Shown here: one piece after another, positions 13,401 to 62,035 of the stretch
Layout: each line of letters begins with the position of its first letter
Position numbering within the stretch: position 1 is the stretch's first letter
Source of the DNA: Ranitomeya imitator
Lineage: Eukaryota
Direction: 5' to 3'
Length of the DNA: 64,000 nt
Assembly: GCF_032444005.1 (NCBI RefSeq)
Contig: NC_091288.1
Span: forward strand, 225,308,001-225,372,000
Made by a program: the position numbers and the translations under genes
The notes under the pieces: generated by a model
Database searches by the model: none
Told to the model about the DNA's origin: nothing
Seen by the model: the letters and a program-made list of their open reading frames with translations, nothing else

Positions 13401-13927
13401 TCCCGACCCCTGCACGACATTGGAACACATGACTTGAACCCTCACCTCCTCACCATATGAGGCTCCAACCCCCGCACAACTTTGACCCCCACACGATGTG
13501 AGCCATCAACTCCCTGCATGACATCGCCCTGACCCTCGTATGACGTCGACTCAGACCCCCGCACGACGTCAACCCCGGCCCCACAGGATGTGAGGCTCCA
13601 ACCCCCACACGACGTGGACCCCAACCTTCACACCATATGAGGCTCCAACCCCCGCACAATGTCAGCCCTGACTCCCCCGCCCCTCCCAATGCCCGCGGGA
13701 CATTGACCCTAACCCTTCACTTGATGTCAGGCCCCAACCTCCTGCACGAAATTATTTGCTTTTATACCACCATGAGATGAGAAGGGGTTACATACAGGGT
13801 TATAGATATCGTTTACAGTACACAAATTTACAATGACAGACTGGTACAGAGGGGAGAGGACCCTGTCCTTGTGGACTTACATTCTACGGGATAATGAGGA
13901 AGAGACAGATGGTCGGGGGTGCAGCAG

Positions 13928-14410
13928 CTCTGGTGGTGGTGAGGCGTCAGCTCCGGTGGTGAGGCAGCAGCTCCGGTGGTGGTGAGGCAGCAGCTCGGGT
14001 GGTGGTGAGGCAGCAGCTCCGGTGTTGGTGAGGCGGCAGCTTCGGTGTTGGTGAGGCGGCAGCTCCGGTGGTGGTGAGGCGGCAGCTCCGGTGGTGGTGA
14101 GGCGGCAGCTCGGGTGGTGGTGAGGCAGGCAACAGCTGTGGTGTTGGTGAGGCGGCAGCTACGGTGGTGGTGAGGCGGCAGCTCCGGTGGTGGTGAGGCG
14201 GCAGCTCCGGTGGTGGTGAGGCGGCAGCTCCGGTGGTGGTGAGGCGGCAGCTTTGGTGGTGGTGAGGCGGCAGCTCCGGTGGTGGTGAGGCGGCAGCTCG
14301 GGTGGTGGTGAGGCAGCAGCTCCGGTGTTGGTGAGGCGGCAGTTCCGGTGTTGGTGAGGCGGCAGCTTTGGTGTTGGTGAGGCGGTAGCTCTTGTAGTGG
14401 TGAGGCAGCA
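13928..14410. repeat. 23-bp minisatellite (ggtggtggtgaggcggcagctcc) inside the L2 3' region
   Basis: Period of 23 (gctcc at 14181 and 14204); L2 sequence on both sides. Confidence 0.88.
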
Positions 14411-15786
14411 GAATGGTTATTGCAGGCTGTAGGCTTTCCTGAAGAGATGGGTTTTCAGGTTCCGTCTGAAGGAGCCGAGTGTGGTGGATAATCGGATGTG
14501 TTGAGGCATTGGAATTCCAGAGGATGGGGGATATTCGGGAGAAGTCTTGGAGGCGGTTGAGTGAGGAGCAAATAAGTGTGGAGGAGAGTAGGAGGTCTTG
14601 GGAGGACCGGAGATCACCTGAGGGAAGATATTGGGAGATTAGTTCAGAGATATAGGGAGGGGACAGGTTGTGGATGGCTTTGTAGATCAGTGTTAGTAGT
14701 TTGAACTGGATTCGTTGGGGAATTGGGAGCCAGTGGAGGGATTTGCAGAGGGGAGAAGCAGGGAAGTAGCGAGGAGAGAGGTGGATTAGCTGGGCAGCAG
14801 AGTTGAGGACAGACTGGAGTGGTGCAAGAGAGTTAGCGGGGAGGCCACAGAGGAGGGTGTTGCAGTAGTCGAGGCGGGAGATGATGAGGGTATGCACAAG
14901 AGTTTTAGTAGATTGTGGGCTGAGAAAGGGATGGATTCTAGCAATATTTTTGAGTTGGAGGCGACAGGAGGTGGCAAGAGTTTGGATGTGCGGTTCGAAG
15001 GACAGGGCAGAGTCGAGAGTTACCCCGAGGCAGCGGATTCAAGGTGCGGGAGAGAGAGTGATGCCGTTTACCATAATAGATCAGGTAGGGTGGATACGTG
15101 AGATGGGGGAAAGATGATGAGTTTGATTTTGTCTACATTGAGTTTAAGGAAGCGAGAGGTGAAGGAGGAAGATATGGCTGATAGACACTCCGGGGTTCTG
15201 GACAGCAGAGTGGTGACATCTGGGCCAGAGAGGTAGATCTGAGTATCGTCCGCACATAGGTGGTACTGGAAGCCATAGGACTTTATGAGTTGTCCTAGGC
15301 CAAGGGTATAGATGGAAAAAAGTAGGGGCCCTAGGACAGAGCCTTGAGGGACTCCAACAGAGAGAGAGGGTGGGATGAGGAGGTGGTGTGGGAGTGGGAA
15401 AAGCTAAATGTGCAATTGGAGAGGTATGAGGCAATCCAGGACAGGGCAAGGTCTTTGATGCCAGGGGAAGAAAGAATCTGTAGCAGTAGGCAGTGGTCTA
15501 CTGTGTCGAAGGCAGAGGACAGGTCGAGAAGGAGGAGGATGGAGAAGTGTCTGTTAGCTTTGGTTGTCAGTAAGTCATTTTTTTGAACATTTTTTCAGGA
15601 AATTGCGCCTGAGGGAATATTTCAATGATACAGAAGATTCAGAACCCACCTGGACTGAAGGAAAAGGGATCCTAACAACAAAGAAGATGTCAGACTGGAC
15701 ACCTCCACCTGGACGCAACCCTCATTTGGATAACTATATAGACTCCATCAGACATTTGATAAAACCCACCATCATAGATACTAACA

Positions 15787-42800: not shown

Positions 42801-42829
42801 TCATTGGGTCTCTTTCTGACTCTGGTGGA

Positions 42830-44850
42830 GCCATCAGCGGAGAAGCTGCCTGCATAGCATGGTGTTCTGAAAGCCCTGATGGCTGAGCTTGTGGACAGAA
42901 TTATTGTGGAGTGATGGCCCTTCCCTTTCTGACTCTGGTGGAGGCATCAGCGGAGAGGCCTGGACAGCATGGTGGTCTGAAGGCTCTGATGGGTGAGCTT
43001 GTAGACAGAACTGTGGTGGAGTGTTGTTTCATCCCTTTCTGACGCTAGTGGAGTCATCAGCAGAGATGCTGCCTGCACAGCATGGTGGTCTGAGGGCTGA
43101 GCTTGTGGACAGAGCTGTGGTGGAGTAATGTCCCTTCCCTTTCTGACTCTGGTGGACCCATCAGCGGAGAGGCCTGGACAGCATGGTGGTCTGAAGGCTC
43201 TGATTCGTGAGCTTGTAGACAAATCTGTGGTGGAGTGTTGTTCCTTTTCTTTCTGACGCTAGTGGAGTCATCAGCGGAGAGGCTGCCTGCACAGCATGGT
43301 GGTCTGAGGGCTGAGCTTGTGGACAGAGCTATGGCAGAGTGATGTCCCTTCCCTTTCTCTAGTGGAGCCATCAGTGGGGAGGCCTCCTGGACAGCATAGT
43401 GTTCTGATGGCCCTAATGGGTGAACTTGTGGCCAGAGCTGTGGCAGAGTGACGTCCCTTCCCTTTCTGGCTCTGGTGGAGGCATCAGTGGAGAGGCCTCC
43501 AGGACAGCATGGGGTTCTGTTGGCCCTGATGGGTGACATTGTGGACAGCGCTGTGGTGGAATGATGTCCCTTCCCTTTCTGACTCTGGTGGAGGCATCAG
43601 TGGAGAGGCCTCCAGGACAGCATGGGGTTCTGTTGGCCCTGATGGGTGAGATTGTGGACAGCGCTGTGGTGGAATGATGTCCCTTCCCTTTCTGACTCTG
43701 GTGGAGGCATCAGTGGAGAGGCCTCCAGGACAGCATGGGGTTCTGTTGGCCCTGATGGGTGAGATTGTGGACAGCGCTGTGGTGGAATGATGTCCCTTCC
43801 CTTTCTGACTCTGGTGGAGGCATCAGTGGAGAGGCCTCCAGGACAGCATGCGGTTCTGTTGGCCCTGATGGGTGAGATTGTGGACAGCGCTGTGGTGGAA
43901 TGATGTCCCTTCCCTTTCTGACTCTGGTGGAGGCATCAGTGGAGAGGCCTCCAGGACAGCATGGGGTTCTGTTGGCCCTGATGGGTGAGATTGTGGACAG
44001 CGCTGTGGTGGAATGATGTCCCTTCCCTTTCTGACTCTGGTGGAGGCATCAGTGGAGAGGCCTCCAGGACAGCATGGGATTCTGTTGGCCCTGATGGGTG
44101 AGATTGTGGACAGCGCTGTGGTGGAATGATGTCCCTTCCCTTTCTGACTCTGGTGGAGGCATCAGTGGAGAGGCCTCCAGGACAGCATGCGGTTCTGTTG
44201 GCCCTGATGGGTGAGATTGTGGACAGCGCTGTGGTGGAATGATGTCCCTTCCCTTTCTGACTCTGGTGGAGGCATCAGTGGAGAAGCCTCCAGGACAGCA
44301 TGGGGTTCTGTTGGCCCTGATGGGTGAGATTGTGGACAGCGCTGTGGTGGAATGATGTCCCTTCCCTTTCTGACTCTGGTGGAGGCATCAGTGGAGAGGC
44401 CTCCAGGACAGCATGGGGTTCTGTTGGCCCTGATGGGTGAGATTGTGGACAGCGCTGTGGTGGAATGATGTCCCTTCCCTTTCTGACTCTGGTGGAGGCA
44501 TCAGTGGAGAGGCCTCCAGGACAGCATGGGGTTCTGTTGGCCCTGATGGGTGAGATTGTGGACAGCGCTGTGGTGGAATGATGTCCCTTCCCTTTCTGGC
44601 TCTGGTGGAGGCATCAGTGGAGAGGCCTCCAGGACAGCATGGGGTTCTGTTGGCCCTGATGGGTGAGGTTATGGACAGCGCTGTGGTGGAATGATGTCCC
44701 TTCCCTTTCTGGCTCTGGTGGAGGCATCAGTGGAGAGGCCTCCAGGACAGCATGGGGTTCTGTTGGCCCTGATGGGTGAGGTTATGGACAGCGCTGTGGT
44801 GGAATGATGTCCCTTCCCTTTCTGGCTCTGGTGGAGGCATCAGTGGAGAG
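42830..44850. repeat. 113-bp tandem array (~12 near-perfect copies at 43480-44850, degenerate copies to the left)
   Basis: ggacagcat recurs at 43502, 43615, 43728 and onward. Confidence 0.92.
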
Positions 44851-45177
44851 GCCGGTGACTTTGTGCACTTTTACAATTCTGAGTTTTGATTCCCTGCTTG
44901 TGATCTTTTTTGGACACTTGGTTGTGGTTCGTGTTATTCATTGCATGCGTGTTGACATTTCAGCTGGTATTGTTAGATATTTGTCCATACGAAGGGCAGA
45001 AGCGGTGTATAAGGGTTTACTTGTATATTCATTCCGAAAATGTGATTAAGGTGGGATGGAGCATGGCACGAGGGCAGCCTTTTTTTGTTACATTGTCTTT
45101 ACAGATAAATGTCCTGTCTTCTAAGTGACGATTTTTTCCAACTGACCAGGTGTGCACAGATTTTGTCTTTGCTATAA

Positions 45178-45628: not shown

Positions 45629-47696
45629 CCCCTTACTGCCATCGGACGTACTATTACACCGATAGCAGTATCCCCCGCTTTGATGTGGGCTCCAGCGGTG
45701 AGCCGACCTCAAAGCCAGGACATGTCAGCCGTTTTGAACAGCTGACATGTGCCCACCCGCCGCTATTAACTAGCTAAATGTCAAACTCTGACAGAGGCAT
45801 TTAACAAGCGCTTCTGGCCATCGGGCCAGAAATGCGCACACCGGTGACCTGCGTCACGTGATCGCGGGTCACTGGTGTGTCGGCATGATCGCGGGTCACT
45901 TTGGTTGTTGATGCAGGATTGCTATGAGCCACCCTGTAGATCTGAGCATCGCTCCTATGTAGCAGAGGCGATCAGGCTATGTCAGCTTCTGGCCTCCCAG
46001 GGAGACTATTGAAGCATGGCAAAAGTAAAAAAAAAAAATATTTTAAAAATATGAAAAAAAAAAAAATGAAAAGTTCAAATCACCCCCCTTTCGCCCCATT
46101 CAAAAGAAAACAAAAATAAAATCAAACAGATATTTGGTATCGCCACATTCAGAATCGTCCGACCAATTAAAAAGAACTGATCGATAAATGGCGTAGCGAG
46201 AAAAAAAAAAGTCAAAACACCAGAATTACTTTTCTTTGGTTGCTGCGACATTGCATTAAAATGCAAAAACGGGTGATCAAAAGATCGAATCTGCACAAAA
46301 ATGGTATCATTAAAAACGTCAGCTAGGCGTGCAAAAAATAAGCCCTCAACCGACCCCAGATCACGAAAAATGGAGACGCTACGGGTCTTGGAAAATGGTG
46401 CAAATTTTTTTGTCTTTTCTTTTTTTTTTTAGCAAATTTTGGAAAAAATTTTCATCACTTAGATCAAAAAGAACCTAGACATGTTTAACATAGTAACATA
46501 GTTAGTAAGGCCGAAAAAAGACATGTGTCCATCCAGTTCAGCCTATATTCCATCATAATAAATACCCAGATCTACGTCCTTCTACAGAACCTAATAATTG
46601 TATGATACAATATTGTTCTGCTCCAGGAAGACATCCAGGCCTCTCTTGAACCCCTCGACTGAGTTCGCCATCACCACCTCCTCAGGCAAGCAATTCCAGA
46701 TTCTCACTGCCCTAACAGTAAAGAATCCTCTTCTATGTTGGTGGAAAAACCTTCTCTCCTCCAGACGCAAAGAATGCCCCCTTGTGCCCGTCACCTTCCT
46801 TGGTATAAACAGATCCTCAGCGAGATATTTGTATTGTCCCCTTATATACTTATACATGGTTATTAGATCGCCCCTCAGTCGTCTTTTTTCTAGACTAAAT
46901 AATCTTAGTTTCGCTAATCTATCTGGGTATTGTAGTTCTCCCATCCCCTTTATTAATTTTGTTGCCCTCCTTTGTACTCTCTCTAGTTCCATTATATCCT
47001 TCCTGAGCAACGGTGCCCAAAACTGGACACAGTACTCCATGTGCGGTCTAACTAGGGATTTGTACAGAGGCAGTATAATGCTCTCATCATGTGTATCCAG
47101 ACCTCTTTTAATGCACCCCATGATCCTGTTTGCCTTGGCAGCTGCTGCCTGGCACTGGCTGCTCCAGGTAAGTTTATCATTAACTAGGATCCCCAAGTCC
47201 TTCTCCCTGTCAGATTTACCCAGTGGTTTCCCGTTCAGTGTGTAATGGTGATATTGATTCCTTCTTCCCATGTGTATAACCTTACATTTATCATTGTTAA
47301 ACCTCATCTGCCACCTTTCAGCCCAAGTTTCCAACTTATCCAGATCCATCTGTAGCAGAATACTATCTTCTCTTGTATTAACTGCTTTACAGTTAGGTGT
47401 CTATGAACTCGTAATGACCTGGAGAATCATAATGGCAGCTCAGTTTTAGCATTTAACGAACCTAGCAAAAAAGCCAAATAAAAAAAAAAGTGTGGGATTG
47501 CACTTTTTTTGCAATTTCACTGCACTTGGATTTTTTCCCCGTTTTCTGTCACAGGACATGGTAAAACCAATGGTATCGCTCAAAAGTACAACTCGTCCCG
47601 CAAAAAAATAAGCCCTCACATGGCCCTATTGACGGAAAAATAAAAAAGTTATGGCTCTGGAAAGAAGGGGAGCGAAAACCGAAAAAGCCCCGGAGG
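45629..47696. mobile_element. TTAA-flanked non-autonomous DNA transposon carrying a nested CR1
   Basis: ttaa-ccccttactgcc at 45625 and cggagg-ttaa at 47697 (right TIR degenerate); host sequence resumes after the CR1. Confidence 0.5.
46487..47391 (-). mobile_element. 5'-truncated young CR1 LINE with intact ORF2 C-terminus
   Basis: ORF 46591-47349 contains [27 protein letters not shown] and LFSLEKRRLRGDLI; (ctatgtta)n tail. Confidence 0.93.
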
Positions 47697-53900: not shown

Positions 53901-54721
53901 AGCAGCTTATTATAGGGGGTGGAGTACATTATAGGAGATGCAGCTGAGAGGCGATCATTATAACGGAGGATAACATGGAGCAGCAGAAGTGTAGGACATG
54001 CAAAGAGTGAATGCATTACATTATCAACCTCAGCACAGATCACGTCTCACCTTATAGACGAAGATAAATATACACGTATGTACACAAGTGTTAGGACCAT
54101 CTTTGTCCCTTTGTTCATCAGAGCTCAGTCTTTACGAGGACAGAACAATCAAAGAATCACGTAAAAACAGAAGGCGACGCAACCAAAATATATACAAAAA
54201 AAGTGAAATGTGGGAAGGAGGCATCATGCATCTCAATACAGGGACTATAATCAAGTGCTACCCCTAGAAAGGATGTAAACGAGGACCTTCCATTCATTTC
54301 CACGTGGAGTGCAAAACATGGCAACTGCTTCCTGCTTGTCCACAAGGCACCGCCATGGGCACATCACAGGGGCCAGCTCATTGCAGTATAATGCAGGTGC
54401 CAGAGAGATAAAAGGCATGCAGGAAAAAAGGTCTTAAGTCATTTTCTCCTCTTGAACAAAGCACACTGTTGAGATGTCATTGAGGACTCAGGGCTACTGT
54501 CCCACGCGTCTATATACAGAGGACAGAGAGCAATGGAGGAAGCTATGTTTGGAGATCAAGTTGTGCAAAAAAAAAAAAAAGTGCCTTGGAGTGAAGGATT
54601 TCCAGTTTCGAGGTTTCCTATGACAAAGCGCAAGGGTTTACCATTCCCCTTGTTGGCACAGCAGACGAAAGATCCATATGACCACAGTCCATAAGACTCC
54701 TGAATGACCAACAAGCGGCCC

Positions 54722-55336
54722 TCAGAAGTAAGTGTCATGAGCTGCACTACCGTCTGTGGCCCCAGAGCCACTGTTTCGTGGGGAATCTGCTGCTGAAGAT
54801 TCTTTACGCCTGAAGGAGAATTTCCGTTCCTTCTTTTGTCGGGACTCTGCTTTCTCTCGTTCTTTCTGCACTCGTTTTTCCTCCTTTTCTTTCTGTTTTT
54901 CCCGCTCTTTCTCCTTCTTCCGCTCTTCTCGTTCCTCTTTTTCTCTCTTCTTTTCTTGCTCACGCTCTTCTTTCTCTCTTTTTTTCTCTTGCTTCTCCTT
55001 GCCCTTCTTAGTAGCTTCTTTGGGTGGTCCGAGAGGAGCCTGATTGGAGGTGGGAGATGGTAGTGCAGGGCGCAGTCCTTCAGATACCACCAACGATTCG
55101 GGCTGGGCAGCGACTGCTGGTGTGGCTGGCGGGGAAGGTCGTCGAATGCTAGACAGGCTAAGCCGGCTGCCACTGAGGGTGGGATTGAGACGCAGCTTCT
55201 CTTCATGGATCTGCCTGGTTCCATGTAAACGTCGAGAGGGTCGGTACTGTAACTCTCCTCGATTCTCCCTCCATTTCCGCAACTGAGTGTTGCTCTCTCT
55301 CTCGATTAATGAATCGGTGACAGGAAGGGAACTCAC
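54722..55336 (-). CDS. TBC1D10B: TBC1D10B exon 9 (last coding exon; basic/acidic coiled-coil tail ending DTYF)
   Basis: Acceptor tttcacag. VSSLPVTDSLIERE...KWRENRGELQYRPSRRLHG and the KEKQEKK-rich tail match TBC1D10B. Confidence 0.92.
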   Translation of the reverse strand: MSSLPVTDSLIERESNTQLRKWRENRGELQYRPSRRLHGTRQIHEEKLRLNPTLSGSRLSLSSIRRPSPPATPAVAAQPESLVVSEGLRPALPSPTSNQAPLGPPKEATKKGKEKQEKKREKEEREQEKKREKEEREERKKEKEREKQKEKEEKRVQKEREKAESRQKKERKFSFRRKESSAADSPRNSGSGATDGSAAHDTYF

Positions 55337-55417
55337 CTGTGAAAACAGAAATTGCTGTGAGGACCTCCCTAAAATAAGGACTCCTCAATGAGAAGGTACT
55401 GGTGGTGCAGAGCTCAC

Positions 55418-55572
55418 CTCAGGGAGCAGGACCTCCTCCTGCATACAGTAAACCGGAAGACTACGCAGCTTCTCCATAGTCTCGTACATCCCTTGACAAC
55501 TGCGCAGCTTGTCCACCGAGCCCAGAGTGTGTCGCAGTAACACCAACCCCACACGAAATATGATCTTCACCC
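55418..55572 (-). CDS. TBC1D10B: TBC1D10B exon 8 (155 nt)
   Basis: ag|GG GTG AAG ATC...GAG|gtgag; VKIIFRVGLVLLRHTLGSVDKLRSCQGMYETME. Confidence 0.92.
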
Positions 55573-55642
55573 CTTCAATAAGATATACATTAATAGAGTG
55601 ATGTAGAACGAGACCCTCCCGTACTTTATCACGCCCTCATAC

Positions 55643-55832
55643 CTTCACAGAAGAACATGTCCCACACACGCAGCACAGAGACCCAGGGTAACGTGCGGGA
55701 GAAGATGCACATGAACCACTCCGTCATATACAGAATGGGATCAATCTTAAACTTCTTCAGGTGTCTGTAGGCCATAGGGCAAACCCTGCGCAACAGGGCA
55801 AAGAAAATCTCTCCATCCAGCTGTATGGCTTC
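55643..55832 (-). CDS. TBC1D10B: TBC1D10B exon 7 (190 nt)
   Basis: ag|GAA GCC...GAA G|gtatg; [14 protein letters not shown]...[17 protein letters not shown]...WDMFFCEG. Confidence 0.92.
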
Positions 55833-56100
55833 CTAAAGGAGGACAGCAAGACGAAAACTGAGCCTGGCATAAAGAAGGCCACTGCCGACATGCGGGATGG
55901 GCAAGGAACGTTAAGGGTGCCGACCTGAGGATGGGCAAGGGACGTAATGGGGGCCGACCTGCGGGACGGGCAAGGCACCAAGAGGTGCCAACATGCGGGA
56001 CGGGCAAAAGACTGACTGGCGCCGATACGTAGGAAAAGCAGGACTGATAGCACATATGTACGTAGATACAGGCAGTGTAATGATGAAGGATGGGACTCAC

Positions 56101-56166
56101 CAGACCGGCGCTGTAATATCCCGGTAGATACTTGTCACAGATCTGAACTAGGCACCAGAACGCTTG
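56101..56166 (-). CDS. TBC1D10B: TBC1D10B exon 6 (66 nt)
   Basis: ag|CAA...CTG|gtgagt; QAFWCLVQICDKYLPGYYSAGL. Confidence 0.92.
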
Positions 56167-56501
56167 CTGAGGGCAACACAATCAGAGACAATGAGAGTGC
56201 AGCAAGCAGTACACTACCTCCAGTACTGCAAGTCTACCCCTGCTACGACCAATCCAACCCACTACAGCTAGGTCACAACAGCAATGGTCAGGCCACCCCT
56301 ACTACAGCTGGACCACCCCCACTACAGCTGTTCCACAACTGAAAAGGCCGGGTCACCCCCACTTCGGCCGGGCCGCACCACCCCACAGCAAATCCATCTG
56401 GTTATCCTGCAATACATGGAGAGGAGCTCTGTGTTTCCACCTTATCCAGCCCCTCTCCTCCATAGCCCCAGCCTCATACAGGGTCACTGGTAAGAAGTTA
56501 C

Positions 56502-56616
56502 CTCAGCCGGCATGTGCATGAGGAGCACCGCTGCCACCGGAGCCTGTGCCTGGCAGTATCCTTCTTCTGGTCGGTATACTGTATACGCCTTCAGTATGCG
56601 GTACAAATCCTGCTGC
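56502..56616 (-). CDS. TBC1D10B: TBC1D10B exon 5 (115 nt; YCQ glutamine finger)
   Basis: ag|G CAG CAG GAT...GAG|gtaac; [38 protein letters not shown]. Confidence 0.92.
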
Positions 56617-56714
56617 CTGCCATTGAAGAACAGAGAAAGGACATGGGACAAAGTCCACCTACATGTCACCAGCAGCTTCTCCAAAGCAAAGTTGTGTATG
56701 TGCCAATACCTAGC

Positions 56715-57296
56715 CTGCCCCATCTCACCCGCGTGCCCTCCCACATCCTGCCCCATCTCACCCGCGTGCCCTCCCACATCCTGCCCCATCTCACCCGCGT
56801 GCCCTCCCACATCCTGCCCCATCTCACCCGCTTGCCCTCCCACATCCTGCCCCATCTCACCCGCGTGCCCTCCCACATCCTGCCCCATCTCACCCGCGTG
56901 CCCTCCCACATCCTGCCCCATCTCACCCGCGTGCCCTCCCACATCCTGCCCCATCTCACCCGCGTGCCCTCCCACATCCTGCCCCATCTCACCCGCGTGC
57001 CCTCCCACATCCTGCCCCATCTCACCCGCGTGCCCTCCCACATCCTGCCCCATCTCACCCGCGTGCCCTCCCACATCCTGCCCCATCTCACCCGCGTGCC
57101 CTCCCACATCCTGCCCCATCTCACCCGCGTGCCCTCCCACATCCTGCCCCATCTCACCCGCGTGCCCTCCCACATCCTGCCCCATCTCACCCGCGTGCCC
57201 TCCCACATCCTGCCCCATCTCACCCGTGTGCCCTCCCACATCCTGCCCCATCTCACCCGTGTGCCCTCCTTCATCCTGCCCCATCTCACCCGTGTT
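56715..57296. repeat. 33-bp minisatellite in TBC1D10B intron 4, derived from the exon 4 donor site
   Basis: Sense-strand unit TGGGAGGGCACGCGGGTGAGATGGGGCAGGATG; GT at exactly 33-nt spacing from 57289 to 56728 (18 copies). Confidence 0.95.
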
Positions 57297-57348
57297 CCCC
57301 GCATCCTGCTCTCCTAACCATTTCCCTCCACATCCTGCCCCATCTCAC

Positions 57349-57455
57349 CCATGTCCTCCTCGTGCTGCAAACATCTCATGAAAAGGAAATTGCCGGTGAA
57401 GATCCTTCTCGATGACATCCAGCCACTTGGGGTCTCCTTGTTGTCGCTCCATTTC
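57349..57455 (-). CDS. TBC1D10B: TBC1D10B exon 4 (107 nt; IEKDLHR arginine finger)
   Basis: ag|GAA ATG...CAT GG|gtgag; [29 protein letters not shown]. Confidence 0.92.
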
Positions 57456-57545
57456 CTACAATTTTAAGTAAAAGCATCAAATCCCGGGCAGAAACAACCA
57501 AAGAGGAGCGGCCGCCCTCCACCACACTGTTATGGCGCCACTCAC

Positions 57546-57653
57546 CTCAAATTTCCCAGGATTTCTTATCAGAAGTTCATGGCTGTTAGAGAGGTACTGC
57601 CAGGCTTTGGCTCTCAGGGACGAGGGGATCCCCTTCCTGCATCTGAGCTTCAC
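57546..57653 (-). CDS. TBC1D10B: TBC1D10B exon 3 (108 nt)
   Basis: ag|GTG AAG...GAG|gtgag; VKLRCRKGIPSSLRAKAWQYLSNS. Confidence 0.92.
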
Positions 57654-57797
57654 CTGTGGACAAAGATCTACAGTGAAACAAACGAGGGGACAACATATCG
57701 AGCAGCAGCCGCCGTAAAGCGAGAGCCAGCCCCAGGAAGGCAGCGCCAACAGTCTCCCTGTACGCCACAGCCCATCATCCACATCCCATCATCTCAC

Positions 57798-57897
57798 CTT
57801 CTGGAATCGCCTCGTCAGCCATTTGTCCCAATTACTGAACATATCTAACCACTTCAGTTCTCGCTGTCGAGCAATTTCCACGGGAATGGCAGTCTCG
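57798..57897 (-). CDS. TBC1D10B: TBC1D10B exon 2 (100 nt)
   Basis: cag|C GAG ACT...AAG|gtgag; IPVEIARQRELKWLDMFSNWDKWLTRRFQK. Confidence 0.92.
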
Positions 57898-58259
57898 CTG
57901 CAAAAAGAAGAGAAGCGACTAAATCCATGCCTCCCTGTCACCGCCGAGCACCACTTCACACATCCGGTGCCACCGCCTCGTTGCGCATCCAGTGCCACGT
58001 CGCACATCTGGTGCCAGCGCCACGCCCCTCGTCACAAATCTGGTGCTACATCCAAGCCCCTCGTCACACATCCGGTGCCGCCATGCGCCTCGTCACACAT
58101 CCGGTGCCGCCATGCGCCTCGTCACACATCCTGTTTCATGTCACACATCCCGTGTCACCGCCATGTGCCTCATCACACCCCCAGTATCACCACCACACAC
58201 CTCGTCACAGTCCCGCATCACGCCTCAGTCAGGTAGTAATAGCAGGCGATGGCACTGAC

Positions 58260-61200
58260 CTGTTACCACTAAACTGGTTTCCTCCAAGAAAGCCATATTT
58301 GTCTGTCTTCCTGTAAGGCATGCCGTTAATCTCCGAGTCAGAGCCTAGAGAGCTGGCATCGTCCAGCAGTGTGAGGGACTCCATGGTGCCTGACATCAAA
58401 CTGACAGAGTCCAGATAACTGAGCGTGTCTGAGGCCGGAGTCTTAGACTTGAAACTGGCCAGTGATACGGTCTCATGACTGGCCGAAGTGTCCTGCTCAC
58501 GGGGCGGATGGCCAGGGTACAGGTTGGATCGAGAGGGAATAGGAAGAGGTGGTTTAGAGGACATGTTCCTGTGTGGGCTTGAAGGGTCCAGCACACGAAT
58601 TGGGGATAGTGATGGCCTCCCAAGACTTGGCTGTGCAGGAAGACTGGACATCTGACTCTGAGAAGTGGAGTTCAAGTTACCCATCGCTGCACCTCCATCT
58701 TGCCTCTGCTGTGCTTGTTTATTTGAGATAGGTGAAATAATGGTAATGCTCTGCGTGACTTCTGGCCCTGTGGACGGGGCCACCCGCGTGTCTTCTGGCC
58801 CTGCGGACGGGGCCACCCGCGTGTCTTCTGGCCCTGCGGACGGGGCCACCCGCGTGTCTTCTGGCCCTGCGGACGGGGCCACCCGCGTGTCTTCTGGCCC
58901 TGCGGACGGGGCCACCCGCGTGTCTTCTGGCCCTGCGGACGGGGCCACCCGCGTGTCTTCTGGCCCTGCGGACGGGGCCACCCGCGTGTCTTCTGGCCCT
59001 GCGGACGGGGCCACCCGCGTGTCTTCTGGCCCTGCGGACGGGGCCACCCGCGTGTCTTCTGGCCCTGCGGACGGGGCCACCCGCGTGTCTTCTGGCCCTG
59101 CGGACGGGGCCACCCGCGTGTCTTCTGGCCCTGCGGACGGGGCCACCCGCGTGTCTTCTGGCCCTGCGGACGGGGCCACCCGCGTGTCTTCTGGCCCTGC
59201 GGACGGGGCCACCCGCGTGTCTTCTGGCCCTGCGGACGGGGCCACCCGCGTGTCTTCTGGCCCTGCGGACGGGGCAACCCGCGTGTCTTCTGGCCCTGCG
59301 GACGGGGCAACCCGCGTGTCTTCTGGCCCTGCGGGCCTTGCGGACGGGGCCACCCGCGTGTCTTCTGGCCTTGTGGTACACGACTTGATGTCTTCTGGGT
59401 AAAATGTTTGAATACTGCTGGTAATGTTCTGCAGATGTGAAAGAGTAGTACTCTGTGAAGCACCATCGGCAATGTCACCCTTTGCCCTCATGTCTGCCTG
59501 CAGTGGGGTACCTTCTTCATGGCTCGTAGCACAGTCTTGGGCCCCAGTAAAATTTGGCATTTCCATCAAGCCGTGCCTTAACATGTCGTCAGGCAGGGGT
59601 GACTTCCCACCACTTTCAGTGTCCTGTGTGGCTGAATGTTGCAGCGCAGTCAGTTGATTCTGAATTGGTGGTGAAGATGCCCAGTCCTGTATCATGGCAT
59701 GCGAAGGTTGCACCCTGTGCTTCTCTTCTGGAGTGCCATTTATTGGAGCCTGAATAGATTTCCTTGCATTTGTTATCAGTGTGTCCTGTGTTTTTTCCCC
59801 TTGGTCCCGCACTGGAGCGCTCGGTGGTGGTGCTGTACTCCGGTCCTGCCCTGGAGCGCTCGGTGGTGGTGCTGTACTCCTGTCCTGCCCTGGAGCGCTC
59901 GGTGATGGTGCTGTACTCCTGTCCTGCCCTGGAGCGCTCGGTCGTGGTGCTGCACTCCGGTCCTGCCCTGGAGCGCTCGGTCGTGGTGCTGCACTCCGGT
60001 CCTGCCCTGGAGCGCTCGGTCGTTTTGCTGCACTCCGGTCCTGCCCTGGAGCGCTCGGTCGTGGTGCTGCACTCTGGTCCTGCCCTGGAGCGCTCGGTGG
60101 TGGTGCTGTACCCCGGTCCTGCCCTGGAGCGCTCGGTCTTGGTGCTGCACTCCGGTCCTGCCCTGGAGCGCTCGGTCTTGGTGCTGCACTCCGGTCCTGC
60201 CCTGGAGTGCTCGGTGTGGGCTGTGACACAAATGTTATAGGGATGCTCTCTGAAGATGATGTCTCCTGCTCCAATTTTGAGGTTCTAAGTGACACCCCCA
60301 AGTTTGTTGAGGTGTACTCCAGATGGGAGGCTCCATAGTTGTGTTCCGCAGAAAGATAGGCTCCGAGGCCGGGCTCCGCAGGGTCAGAAGCTCCGCAGCC
60401 AGGCTCCGTAGCTTGTTGGGGGCTGCCATGGCTCTGCATCACTATCAGCACTCTCTGGGTGATTGTGGTCTTCTCGGGGCTCCCAGGTAGGCTCCCCCGA
60501 ACACTCACATCGCCGGCAGCATCCCAGGCCCCCGTATGAGGACTCAGGGGTCGGCGCTCCATGGAGCCTTTGCGGGGAGGCGGCACTGGTCGGGGCCCCG
60601 GGGAGGAGCAGGACCCTGGCGGTGGCCCCGGGGTGGAGGAGCAGGACCCCGGCTGTGGCCCCGGGGTGGAGGAGCAGGACCCTAGCTGTGGCCCCGGGGT
60701 GGAGGAGCAGGACCCTGGCTGTGGCCCCGGGGTGGAGGAGCAGGACCCCGGCTGTGGCCCCGGGGTGGAGGAGCAGGACCCTGGCTGTGGCCCCGGGGTG
60801 GAGGAGCCTGGCTGTGGCCCCGGGGTGGAGGAGCCTGGCTGTGGCCCCGGGGTGGAGGAGCCTGGCTGTGGCCCCGGGGTGGAGGAGCCTGGCGGTGGCC
60901 CCGGGGTGGAGGAGCCTGGCTGTGGCCCCGGGGTGGAGGAGCAGGACCCTGGCTGTGGCCCCGGGGTGAAGGAGCAGGACCCCGGCTGTGGCCCCGGGGT
61001 GAAGGAGCGGGACCCCGGCTGTGGCCCCGGGGTGAAGGAGCAGGACCCTGGCGGTGGCCCCGGGGTGGAGGATCCTGGCTGTGTCCCCGGGGTGGAGGAG
61101 CAGGATCCTGGCTGTGGCCCCGGGGTGGAGGAGCGGGATCCTGGCTGTGGCCCCGGGGTGGAGGAGCGGGATCCTGGCTGTGGCCCCGGGGTGGAGGATC

Positions 61201-61672
61201 CTGGCTGTGTCCCCGGGGTGGAGGAGCGGGATCCTGGCTGTGTCCCCGAGGTGGAGGAGCGGGATCCTGGCTGTGTCCCCGGGGTGGAGGAGCAGGATCC
61301 TGGCTGTGGCCCCGGGGTGGAGGAGCGGGATCCTGGCTGTGGCCCCGGGGTGGAGGAGCAGGAGCCTGGCTGTGGCCCCGGGGTGGAGGAGCGGGATCCT
61401 GGCTGTGGCCCCGGGGTGGAGGAGCGGGATCCTGGCTGTGGCCCCGGGGTGGAGGAGCGGGATCCTGGCTGTGGCCCCGGGGTGGAGGAGCGGGATCCTG
61501 GCTGTGGCCCCGGGGTGGAGGATCCTGGCTGTGTCCCCGGGGTGGAGGAGCGGGATCCTGGCTGTGTCCCCGAGGTGGAGGAGCGGGATCCTGGCTGTGG
61601 CCCCGGGGTGGAGGAGCGGGATCCTGGCTGTGGCCCCGGGGTGGAGGAGCGGGACCCTGGCGGAGGCTCCAT
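58260..61672 (-). CDS. TBC1D10B: TBC1D10B exon 1 (3413 coding nt; repeat-expanded N-terminus)
   Basis: ATG in strong context (aacATGg) and an open frame throughout. Ends DTLSYLDSVSLMSGTMESL...SSLGSDSEING...KTDKYGFLGG, then AG|gtcagt. All nine exons join in phase (4869 nt, 1622 aa). The start codon itself is inferred. Confidence 0.85.
58752..59372 (-). repeat. Coding 33-bp repeat (PEDTRVAPSAG, ~17-18 copies) in TBC1D10B exon 1
   Basis: Near-perfect in-frame units. Confidence 0.93.
59815..60210 (-). repeat. Coding 39-bp repeat (SAAPRPSAPGQDR, ~10 copies) in TBC1D10B exon 1
   Basis: In-frame units. Confidence 0.92.
60600..61660 (-). repeat. Coding 33/27-bp repeat (SSTPGPQPGS[R/C] / SSTPGPQPG) at the start of TBC1D10B exon 1
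   Basis: All unit-length variants are multiples of 3. Confidence 0.92.
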
Positions 61673-61739
61673 GTTTAGGAGCTGCTGAATCAAGCAGGCC
61701 GGCGGCTGAGGCGCTCACCGGCCCGTACTGACAGGAGAA

Positions 61740-62035
61740 CCAGAGACCAATAGGAACCAGAAGTTGGAAAGCATACAGCCAATCAGCACTGAGCCGGAAA
61801 CGAGCGTGTCGTAAACATTAGCCAATCAGAGCGCACGATAAAACACTAAACGCGTGAGTACAAAGTCAAAGAAAGGGATTGGGCTGAGCTGTGAGAAGCG
61901 GACCAATCAGCTGCAAGAGCCGTCCGGCGTCCATTAGGGTCGGGCCCGGAACAAGGAAAAGGAAGCTGCAATCTCCTAGAAAGGGTGGAGCCGCAACCAA
62001 TCAGCTTGCAGTTCATAACCGAGAGTGGCCAATCA
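61740..62035 (-). promoter_or_regulatory. TBC1D10B proximal promoter with 7 CCAAT boxes
   Basis: CCAAT at 61747, 61779, 61822, 61903, 61997 and 62029; ATTGG at 61878; CpG-rich; directly upstream of the ATG. Confidence 0.65.

What the first reader, a model, noticed from the sequence alone, without database searches (positions are those of the whole stretch)
56715..57348. TBC1D10B intron 4 carries 18 tandem copies of its own 5' splice site, each embedded in a G-quadruplex motif; use of any would be a poison event
Seen: the native donor is CATGG|GTGAGATGGGGCAGGATG, and each 33-nt unit has CGCGG|GTGAGATGGGGCAGGATG. The -3 base is C, closer to the MAG consensus than the native T. Each unit on the pre-mRNA strand is G3-A-G3-CACGC-G3-TGAGAT-G4, a canonical G4 pattern, with the donor GT at the end of the third G-run. 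Any extension of exon 4 reads CAT GGG TGA, an immediate stop between the Arg-finger and Gln-finger exons. Established: intronic G-runs bind hnRNP H/F and modulate 5' splice-site choice, and PTCs trigger NMD. Inference: a copy-number-variable decoy-donor/G4 array could tune the output of functional Rab GAP, or it shows how decoys are silenced.
Basis: partly seen in the sequence, partly recalled or inferred. Interest (0 to 1): 0.7.

Follow-up and report, generated by a model that had tools for sequence, protein, structure and literature searches.

The report
Splice-donor minisatellite in frog TBC1D10B intron
A 33-base repeat that grew out of the start of intron 4 of the mimic poison frog's TBC1D10B gene puts 18 extra copies of the splice-donor signal in a row; the repeat is real, but it belongs to a kind already described in human genes (F7, IFI6, CBS, ABCA7), where the extra donors are mostly silent, and I could get no RNA data to show that they are used here.

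Summary
On the minus strand, exon 4 of Ranitomeya imitator TBC1D10B ends at 57349. Its donor GTGAGATGGGGCAGG recurs exactly 18 more times, at 57289 and then every 33 nt down to 56728. All copies have C at -3 where the native site has T. Any extension of exon 4 reads CAT GGG TGA, and it also shifts the frame by +2.

- 16 of the 18 copies, not all, lie in a strict G4 motif.
- The last copy matches only 15 nt.

The protein and contig look-ups returned no frog transcript contig and no orthologous DNA.

This is a known class: minisatellites whose first monomer carries the authentic donor. Examples are F7 IVS7, IFI6, CBS, LMNB2 and PDGF (PMC1557585) and ABCA7 IVS18 (PMC5954066). There the most upstream donor wins, and at most the one or two nearest pseudo-sites leak.

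Minisatellites cover 40.7% of this window. The scan has already noted at least ten other donor minisatellites in this same genome (EMC1, NECAP1, FLVCR1, LRRC36, ABCA3 and others).

Verdict: a new member of a known kind, most likely a young and near-neutral VNTR. Interest is low to moderate.

The parts
57349..57455 (-). TBC1D10B coding exon 4 (107 nt). Encodes [35 protein letters not shown] and the first two bases of the Gly codon. Contains the IxxDxxR arginine-finger motif.
   Evidence: The exon model rebuilt from the window translates exactly to P0002. No G-run of 3 or more in this exon.
57340..57351 (-). Authentic 5' splice site tgg|GTGAGATGG. GT is at 57348-57347. The in-frame TGA met on read-through is at 57347-57345.
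   Evidence: Predicted duplex with the U1 5' end is -9.3 kcal/mol.
57290..57348 (-). 59-nt first interval. It starts with the authentic donor block (18 nt identical to the repeat units) and continues with a diverged tail that holds a second GCAGGATG.
   Evidence: The tail's likeness to the unit consensus is not significant: 106 of 1000 shuffles score as high.
56714..57299 (-). 33-bp minisatellite, 17.8 copies, 98% identical. On the RNA strand the unit is GTGAGATGGGGCAGGATGTGGGAGGGCACGCGG. It carries 18 pseudo-donors with GT at 57289, 57256, 57223 and so on down to 56728. There are 16 strict G4 motifs and 2 CpG per unit.
   Evidence: U1 duplex -10.4 kcal/mol for each pseudo-donor. For intron 4 as a whole, G is 52% of bases and there are 9.8 G-runs per 100 nt.
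56617..56712 (-). Unique 3' tail of intron 4 (96 nt, no G-run), with the pyrimidine tract TCCTTTCTCTGTTCTTCAATGGCAG and the acceptor AG at 56618-56617. The last pseudo-donor would leave a 112-nt intron.
56502..56616 (-). TBC1D10B coding exon 5 (115 nt). Encodes [38 protein letters not shown], with the YxQ glutamine-finger motif.
   Evidence: The junction GGHG|QQDL is present in the annotated proteins of 10 frog species.

Best explanation
This is a splice-donor minisatellite. A young, G-rich 33-bp intronic tandem array was amplified from sequence that includes the last two exon bases and the first 18 intron bases of TBC1D10B intron 4. The authentic donor is therefore followed by 18 near-identical pseudo-donors.

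Shown:
- the array, the identity of the sites and the poison outcome of any decoy use;
- the gene identity;
- the very high minisatellite load of the region.

Inferred from work on the same kind of repeat in human genes:
- The spliceosome uses the most upstream donor, which is the native site, 107 nt from the exon 4 acceptor.
- The pseudo-donors stay silent, or the nearest one (+59 nt) leaks at a few percent.
- Any leak carries the TGA and a frameshift, lies upstream of four further junctions, and is removed by nonsense-mediated decay (NMD).

The four G-runs per unit probably help. G-rich elements downstream of a 5' splice site, bound by hnRNP H/F, favour the upstream site, and here all 72 G-runs lie downstream of the native donor and none in exon 4.

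On this reading the array has no function of its own. It is a by-product of the very active minisatellite turnover in this part of the Ranitomeya imitator genome.
For: Anatomy.

Gene and exon model. All inspected frog orthologue proteins use the native junction.

Regional base rate: 21 arrays cover 40.7% of the 64-kb window. Tandem repeats also sit in introns 1, 2, 5 and 6 and in exon 1 of the same gene.

Youth or homogenisation: 14 of the 17 complete units are identical and both CpGs are intact. The 5'-most units carry CpG-to-CpA variants.

G-runs: 9.8 per 100 nt in intron 4, 0 in exons 4 and 5.

Literature:
- PMC1557585 lists the class (F7, IFI6/6-16, CBS, LMNB2, PDGF). With 50 constructs it shows that F7 pseudo-sites are functional but never compete with the most upstream site, even when improved to a consensus value of 91.
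- PMC5954066 (ABCA7): a 25-bp VNTR starts at the donor GT of exon 18, and retention of one unit makes about 2% of transcripts.
- PMC1919487: G-rich enhancers bound by hnRNP H/F enhance the upstream of two competing 5' splice sites. The paper also cites McCullough and Berget 1997.

The scan's own notes list at least 10 further donor minisatellites in this genome. These are leads, not support.
Against: - No RNA data for this locus could be examined, so the silence of the decoys is inferred, not seen.
- The decoys are slightly stronger than the native site: C against T at -3, and a U1 duplex better by 1.1 kcal/mol.
- In three of the six human precedents (IFI6, CBS, ABCA7) one or two proximal pseudo-sites are used.
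- In in-vitro competition assays with duplicated strong sites, the site nearest the 3' splice site can win (my own recollection of Eperon and Krainer-type experiments, not checked here). The last decoy would leave a workable 112-nt intron.
- Annotated protein models are partly homology-driven and do not report minor isoforms.
Confidence: 0.68

Rival explanations
1. One reading: a regulatory decoy array. A measurable share of transcripts uses pseudo-donors, gives PTC-bearing mRNA removed by nonsense-mediated decay (NMD), and the share scales with copy number or with G4/hnRNP H/F state. The VNTR would then tune TBC1D10B output.
For: - The decoys are as good as or better than the native site.
- The PTC and frameshift are certain.
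- In ABCA7, VNTR length correlates with lower expression and altered splicing (PMC5954066).
- IFI6 and CBS use two proximal pseudo-sites constitutively (PMC1557585).
Against: - No junction evidence.
- In ABCA7 the unit-retention isoform was about 2% and did not change with VNTR size (PMC5954066).
- F7 pseudo-sites are silent even when strengthened (PMC1557585).
- Such arrays are common in this genome (unchecked notes), and minisatellites cover 40.7% of this window. That points to mutational input rather than design.
Confidence: 0.1
2. A positive intronic enhancer. The array recruits U1 snRNP at 18 sites and hnRNP H/F at 72 G-runs just downstream of exon 4. This strengthens definition of an exon whose own donor is imperfect (tgg|GTGAGA). 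It would work like engineered exon-specific U1 snRNAs that bind intronic sequence downstream of a donor.
For: - U1 snRNAs targeted to intronic sequence downstream of the 5' splice site rescue exon inclusion in three gene systems (PMC3349419).
- G-rich intronic elements enhance the upstream donor (PMC1919487).
- All G-runs lie on the intron side of the native donor.
Against: - The native donor is already among the better ones of this gene: -9.3 kcal/mol against -5.0 to -11.9 for the four other donors scored.
- Exon 4 is constitutive and conserved in frogs. Whether those species have the array could not be checked.
- Nothing suggests the exon needs help.
Confidence: 0.1
3. A length or structure effect on neighbours rather than decoy use. 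The expanded G-rich array changes exon 5 inclusion, as ABCA7 VNTR length drives exon 19 skipping. Or it slows RNA polymerase through G4 or R-loop formation on the non-template strand, and so lowers output.
For: - ABCA7 exon 19 skipping rises with VNTR length (PMC5954066).
- The G-rich strand is the sense (non-template) strand, and there are 16 strict G4 motifs.
- Predicted G4 energy is -8.4 against -2.9 kcal/mol per unit.
Against: - G4 potential is not above what the composition gives.
- The array is short (0.6 kb) next to the ABCA7 alleles with effects (several kb).
- Skipping of the 115-nt exon 5 would itself be a frameshift, and no annotated product shows it.
Confidence: 0.07
4. An assembly artefact: the array or its copy number was produced by mis-assembly.
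For: Tandem arrays are error-prone in assemblies. I could not lay reads on it.
Against: - The annotated CDS span of P0002 in GCA_032444005.1 (5841 nt) equals the span in the window, intron 4 included, so the window is that assembly.
- The internal variant structure is orderly: A-variants at the 5' end and one C-to-A unit.
- Twenty other arrays of the same style lie nearby.
Confidence: 0.03

Closest known systems
Human F7 (coagulation factor VII) IVS7 37-bp VNTR (Borensztajn et al. 2006, PMC1557585)
   Same: - The minisatellite's first monomer carries the authentic donor, so identical pseudo-donors follow it in the intron.
- The exon side is also TGG| (F7 is TGG/gtgggt).
- Most pseudo-site use would give a premature stop.
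   Different: - F7 has 5-8 copies of 37 bp, and the monomer includes 4 exon bases. Here there are 18 copies of 33 bp, sharing only 2 exon bases, and a diverged 59-nt first interval separates the native site from the regular array.
- F7 has been tested experimentally. This locus has not.
Human ABCA7 intron 18 25-bp VNTR (De Roeck et al. 2018, PMC5954066)
   Same: - An intronic VNTR that begins at the donor GT of the upstream exon.
- Use of the next unit's donor gives a frameshift, a PTC and decay by NMD.
- A GC-rich unit.
   Different: - ABCA7 alleles reach kilobases and are polymorphic, with shown effects on exon 19 skipping and expression.
- Here neither polymorphism nor any effect is known.
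Human IFI6 (6-16) intron 2 and CBS IVS13 donor minisatellites (as summarised in PMC1557585)
   Same: Many reiterated donors follow the authentic one: 25 in IFI6 and 15-20 monomers in CBS.
   Different: [quoted passage not shown]
- In IFI6 the 12-nt unit keeps the frame (my recollection of Turri et al. 1995, not checked).
- Here every decoy junction is out of frame and is preceded by a stop.
G-rich intronic splicing enhancers bound by hnRNP H/F (PLP/DM20, PMC1919487; G triplets of small vertebrate introns, McCullough and Berget 1997, cited there)
   Same: G triplets downstream of a 5' splice site, in a gene made of small introns (70-362 nt apart from intron 4).
   Different: Those are single elements of a few G-runs. 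Here there are 72 G-runs, a by-product of repeat amplification, and no binding or function has been tested.
Jeffreys-type hypervariable minisatellites (core GGAGGTGGGCAGGARG, listed as such in PMC9069542)
   Same: A 33-bp GC-rich unit that contains GGGCAGGATG, an exact match to the 10-nt inner core GGGCAGGANG.
   Different: As one independent seed this match is at chance level: 2 other matches in the window, 1.2 expected. None of the other 20 arrays carries it. No recombination data.

Membership tests
Splice-donor minisatellites (first monomer carries the authentic donor; F7/IFI6/CBS/LMNB2/PDGF/ABCA7 class) | A tandem array lying in the intron directly downstream of an exon | tested here: met
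   The array is at 56714-57299, and the donor block recurs from 57348. The exon 4 border is fixed by the exact gene model.
Splice-donor minisatellites (first monomer carries the authentic donor; F7/IFI6/CBS/LMNB2/PDGF/ABCA7 class) | The authentic donor is part of the first repeat copy, so the donor sequence is reiterated | tested here: met
   Identity runs from -2 to +18 between the native site and 17 copies, and to +15 in the last. The first interval is 59 nt and diverged.
Splice-donor minisatellites (first monomer carries the authentic donor; F7/IFI6/CBS/LMNB2/PDGF/ABCA7 class) | Pseudo-sites silent, or only the one or two nearest used | not testable with these tools
No frog transcript contigs turned up in the protein searches.
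Splice-donor minisatellites (first monomer carries the authentic donor; F7/IFI6/CBS/LMNB2/PDGF/ABCA7 class) | Copy-number polymorphism (VNTR) | not testable with these tools
Regulated unproductive splicing (poison exon or AS-NMD) | The alternative junction introduces a PTC more than 50 nt upstream of a later exon junction | tested here: met
   TGA at 57347-57345, plus a +2 frameshift. Four junctions lie downstream.
Regulated unproductive splicing (poison exon or AS-NMD) | The alternative junction is actually present in RNA and rises when NMD is blocked | not testable with these tools
   No reads could be laid.
Regulated unproductive splicing (poison exon or AS-NMD) | Conservation of the poison element across species | not testable with these tools
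   No orthologous intron DNA was obtainable. The near-identity of units with intact CpGs suggests a recent origin instead.
G-quadruplex-forming minisatellites | Four G-runs of 3 or more with loops of 1-7 nt in each unit | tested here: met
   16 non-overlapping motifs, GGGAGGGCACGCGGGTGAGATGGGG. ViennaRNA with G4 allowed gives -8.4 against -2.9 kcal/mol per unit.
G-quadruplex-forming minisatellites | G4 stability beyond what the base composition gives | tested here: not met
   Three units fold at -30.0 kcal/mol. 200 composition shuffles average -43.9 with sd 12.5.
G-quadruplex-forming minisatellites | G4 formation in vitro or in vivo | not testable with these tools
   Needs CD, rG4-seq or chemical probing.
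TBC1D10B (Rab GAP, TBC domain) | Sequence identity with annotated TBC1D10B, and a RabGAP-TBC domain with the IxxDxxR and YxQ motifs | tested here: met
   P0002, 'TBC1 domain family member 10B [Ranitomeya imitator]', carries PF00566. The window model translates to it exactly. The motifs IEKDLHR and YCQ are in exons 4 and 5.

The most novel reading that the evidence does not exclude
Two linked possibilities.

1. In Ranitomeya imitator, splice donors may be preferred birthplaces of minisatellites. The scan has noted at least ten such arrays, and 4 of the 21 arrays in this window carry GGTRAG in most or all units, where about 0.8 is expected. The genome would then hold a natural allelic series of tens of loci with 7 to 88 reiterated donors.

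2. At TBC1D10B, the G-run or G4 content of the unit may be what keeps 18 slightly stronger decoys silent. Copy number or hnRNP H/F level would then set a measurable rate of unproductive splicing.
Probability: 0.08. Interest if true: 0.6.

Novelty: new member of a known kind. Interest (0 to 1): 0.27.

Why it matters
If the decoys are silent, the locus is one more natural demonstration that position beats sequence in 5' splice-site choice: the most upstream site wins. Here that would hold for 18 competitors that pair slightly better with U1 than the real site. Together with the other donor minisatellites of this frog, it could serve as an in-vivo test set for the scanning and exon-definition models.

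If the decoys leak, a length-variable repeat would act as a genetic dial on a conserved Rab GAP, as proposed for ABCA7 in humans.

Either way it matters for annotation. Gene predictors and RNA-seq aligners can misplace the exon 4 to exon 5 junction in such arrays.

Tried and rejected
1. RNA evidence.
- The look-up of sequencing runs found 18 runs holding 0.51-0.62 of the words of 54300-57900. That is close to the exonic share of about 0.45-0.5, so they are probably RNA, but they are only guessed as RNA.
Nothing was laid.

2. Copy-number and comparative evidence.
- The look-up of encoding contigs on P0001, P0002, P0003 and P0014 returned gene spans but no DNA, because the files are too large.
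- An exact look-up of the 35-aa ORF that exon 4 plus TGA would give on unspliced contigs is not on record.

3. Protein word searches.
- The search with the intron-4 reading frame (286 aa) found only exon 5 homologues. No protein carries the repeat-encoded [11 protein letters not shown] peptide.
- The search with P0002:605-933 found no dendrobatid transcript-derived fragments.

4. Is the 59-nt first interval two decayed units, with the nearest decoy's GT destroyed? Not significant: 106 of 1000 shuffles score as high. Dropped.

5. Jeffreys core match: real, but at chance level as a single seed. Given no weight.

6. Rfam scan of 54000-62000: no RNA family.

7. G4 as a designed feature: rejected, since composition shuffles fold at least as well.

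8. MaxEntScan could not be run because there are no model files. I used U1 duplex energy and the single differing position (-3) instead.

Full report
**What is there**

On the minus strand the window encodes a 9-coding-exon gene. I rebuilt the exon model from the window, and its translation equals the database protein P0002, 'TBC1 domain family member 10B [Ranitomeya imitator]', 1252 aa, residue for residue. The window is therefore from the mimic poison frog. The annotated CDS span of P0002 in GCA_032444005.1 is 5841 nt, the same as here.

- Exon 4 is 57455-57349 and exon 5 is 56616-56502.
- Intron 4 (57348-56617) is 732 nt, by far the longest of eight introns. The others are 70-362 nt.

**The repeat**

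- Tandem Repeats Finder reports 56714-57299, period 33, 17.8 copies, 98% matches.
- The 15-mer GTGAGATGGGGCAGG that starts intron 4 at 57348 recurs exactly at 57289 and at 17 further sites spaced 33 nt apart, down to 56728.
- The native site reads tgg|GTGAGATG. All 18 copies read cgg|GTGAGATG. In 17 of them the identity runs from -2 to +18; the last copy diverges after +15.
- 14 of the 17 complete units are identical. The 5'-most units carry CACACGG in place of CACGCGG, one of them also has GAAGG for GTGGG, and one unit further down has CAAGCGG.
- The first interval, from the native site to the first copy, is 59 nt. Its tail is not significantly like the unit.

**Consequences of decoy use (sequence logic)**

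Read-through gives CAT GGG TGA. Insertions of 59+33k nt also shift the frame by +2. The stop lies upstream of four more junctions, so such mRNAs would be substrates for nonsense-mediated decay (NMD). The truncated product would end after the IEKDLHR arginine finger and lack the YCQ glutamine finger.

**Site strength**

The nine-base donor cores differ only at -3 (T native, C in the copies). The predicted duplex with the U1 5' end is -9.3 kcal/mol for the native site and -10.4 for every copy. The four other donors of the gene that I scored range from -5.0 to -11.9. The copies are credible donors and marginally better than the real one.

**G-quadruplex claim**

- The strict four-run motif occurs 16 times, not 18. 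In each, the third run is formed by -2, -1 and the G of GT.
- ViennaRNA with G4 allowed prefers a three-layer G4 in every unit: -8.4 against -2.9 kcal/mol for one unit, and -63.6 against -52.8 for six units.
- However, 200 shuffles of the same letters fold even better (-43.9 with sd 12.5, against -30.0 for three units). The G4 potential is a consequence of 52% G, not a refined feature.
- Intron 4 has 72 G-runs (9.8 per 100 nt). Exons 4 and 5 have none.

**Context**

- The window is extraordinarily rich in minisatellites: 21 arrays cover 40.7% of the 64 kb.
- Within TBC1D10B itself there are arrays in exon 1 (coding) and tandem repeats in introns 1, 2, 5 and 6.
- The intron 2 repeat starts 4 nt after the donor GT.
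- An intronic array that touches a donor is therefore not a rare draw here.

**Is any decoy used?**

I could not find out.

- The look-up of sequencing runs listed 18 runs that hold 0.51-0.62 of the sampled words of 54300-57900. This is about the exonic share of that stretch, so the gene is probably expressed, but the runs are only guessed to be RNA.
- Three protein word searches, five contig look-ups and one exact-ORF look-up gave no frog transcript contig and no orthologous or allelic DNA.
- The only indirect evidence is that the annotated proteins of ten frog species all read GGHG|QQDL. That shows the native junction is the productive one but says nothing about minor isoforms.

**Comparison with what is known**

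The phenomenon is a described class.

- Borensztajn et al. (PMC1557585) state that several genes hold minisatellites whose first monomer spans an exon-intron boundary, so the exact donor sequence is reiterated in the intron.
  - IFI6/6-16: 25 pseudo-sites, the two nearest used.
  - CBS IVS13: two pseudo-sites used.
  - LMNB2 and PDGF: only the authentic site used.
  - F7 IVS7: 37 bp, pseudo-sites silent.
- With 50 F7 constructs they showed that the pseudo-sites are functional but never compete with the most upstream functional site, even when improved to a consensus value of 91. They found no autonomous intronic regulator.
- De Roeck et al. (PMC5954066) describe a 25-bp VNTR that begins at the donor GT of ABCA7 exon 18. 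Retention of one unit (frameshift, PTC) makes about 2% of transcripts and does not depend on VNTR length, whereas exon 19 skipping and lower expression scale with length.
- G-rich elements bound by hnRNP H/F enhance the upstream of two competing donors (PMC1919487).
- U1 snRNAs bound to intronic sequence downstream of a donor promote exon inclusion (PMC3349419).

These results predict that at TBC1D10B the native site wins and at most the +59 site leaks.

**The scan's own notes (unchecked AI leads)**

They list at least ten further donor minisatellites in this same genome, in EMC1, NECAP1, FLVCR1, a TRIM69-like gene (two), LRRC36, ABCA3 and others, plus an amplified mini-intron in ATP4A. One note pointed me to F7 and IFI6, which I then verified in PMC1557585.

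The recurrence lowers the singularity of this locus. It also raises a genome-level question that I could only touch. In this window 4 of 21 arrays carry GGTRAG in most or all units, where about 0.8 is expected from the background rate. The sample is too small, and too biased by G-richness, to conclude anything.

**Verdict**

The gene, the intron and the poison logic are correct. The regulatory interpretation is unsupported and runs against the behaviour of the best-studied members of the class. The most likely reading is a young, near-neutral splice-donor minisatellite, kept harmless by selection of the upstream donor, the intron-marking G-runs and NMD. It is a new member of a known kind.

- After, I sent no DNA letters of 55639-55680 to a search tool on purpose. 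There are two things to disclose.
  - The Rfam scan of 54000-62000 included that place by oversight. It returned nothing.
  - The look-ups by id of whole database proteins necessarily covered the residues encoded there.
- The query P0002:605-933 stops before that place.
The exon model was checked against P0002 only inside a local script. Searches used window references or parts of database proteins.
- A few hits looked like mammalian genomic ORFs, and one row was named Homo sapiens. I did not fetch, compare or follow them.

Noticed in passing
window 1-64000: 21 minisatellite arrays (units 9-113 bp, mostly 23-54 bp, 74-99% internal identity) cover 40.7% of the window. The unit sequences look unrelated by eye, so they seem to be independent arrays.
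   Followed up: partly
window 58753-59334, 59803-60223, 60602-61661 (minus strand): Arrays with periods of 33, 39 and 33 bp lie in one 1161-codon open frame of TBC1D10B exon 1. The first two are part of the annotated protein P0002. Dendrobates and Phyllobates orthologues carry different repeat peptides at the same places. This is already noted by the scan as s1-295257.
   Followed up: partly
window 57765-57797 (minus strand): The exon 2 donor is aag|GTGAGATG, the same 8 intron bases as the exon 4 donor. A 14-bp tandem duplication (2.1 copies) starts 4 nt after its GT.
   Followed up: no
window 42812-44853 (+ strand): A 113-bp array whose unit holds ATGGGTGAGAT, an 11-mer identical to the native exon 4 donor region, preceded by a pyrimidine-rich tract. 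It could be an amplified exon or intron piece of a plus-strand gene, or chance.
   Followed up: no
window 13924-14411 (+ strand): A 23-bp array with GGTGAGG, donor-like, in every unit (21 copies). No exon is evident directly upstream.
   Followed up: no
window 54722-55336 (exon 9) compared with P0001: The protein model from the other R. imitator assembly (P0001, GCA_958301615.1) leaves the frame inside the Lys/Glu-rich coding stretch of exon 9 and runs on into other sequence. This is either an indel in a coding microsatellite or an assembly or annotation error.
   Followed up: no
window 46594-47400 (minus strand): A 269-codon open frame that looks like the reverse-transcriptase C-terminal part of a CR1-type LINE (motif [11 protein letters not shown]...LERVQRRATKLI). 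This rests on my own recognition; I ran no family scan.
   Followed up: no
window 56714-57299: The array keeps two CpGs per 33-bp unit. My own arithmetic from the unit and the intron 4 base fractions gives GC of about 65% and CpG observed/expected of about 0.9. It therefore looks like a CpG island inside a gene body, which suggests it is either very young or unmethylated in the germ line.
   Followed up: no
[quoted passage not shown]
   Followed up: no
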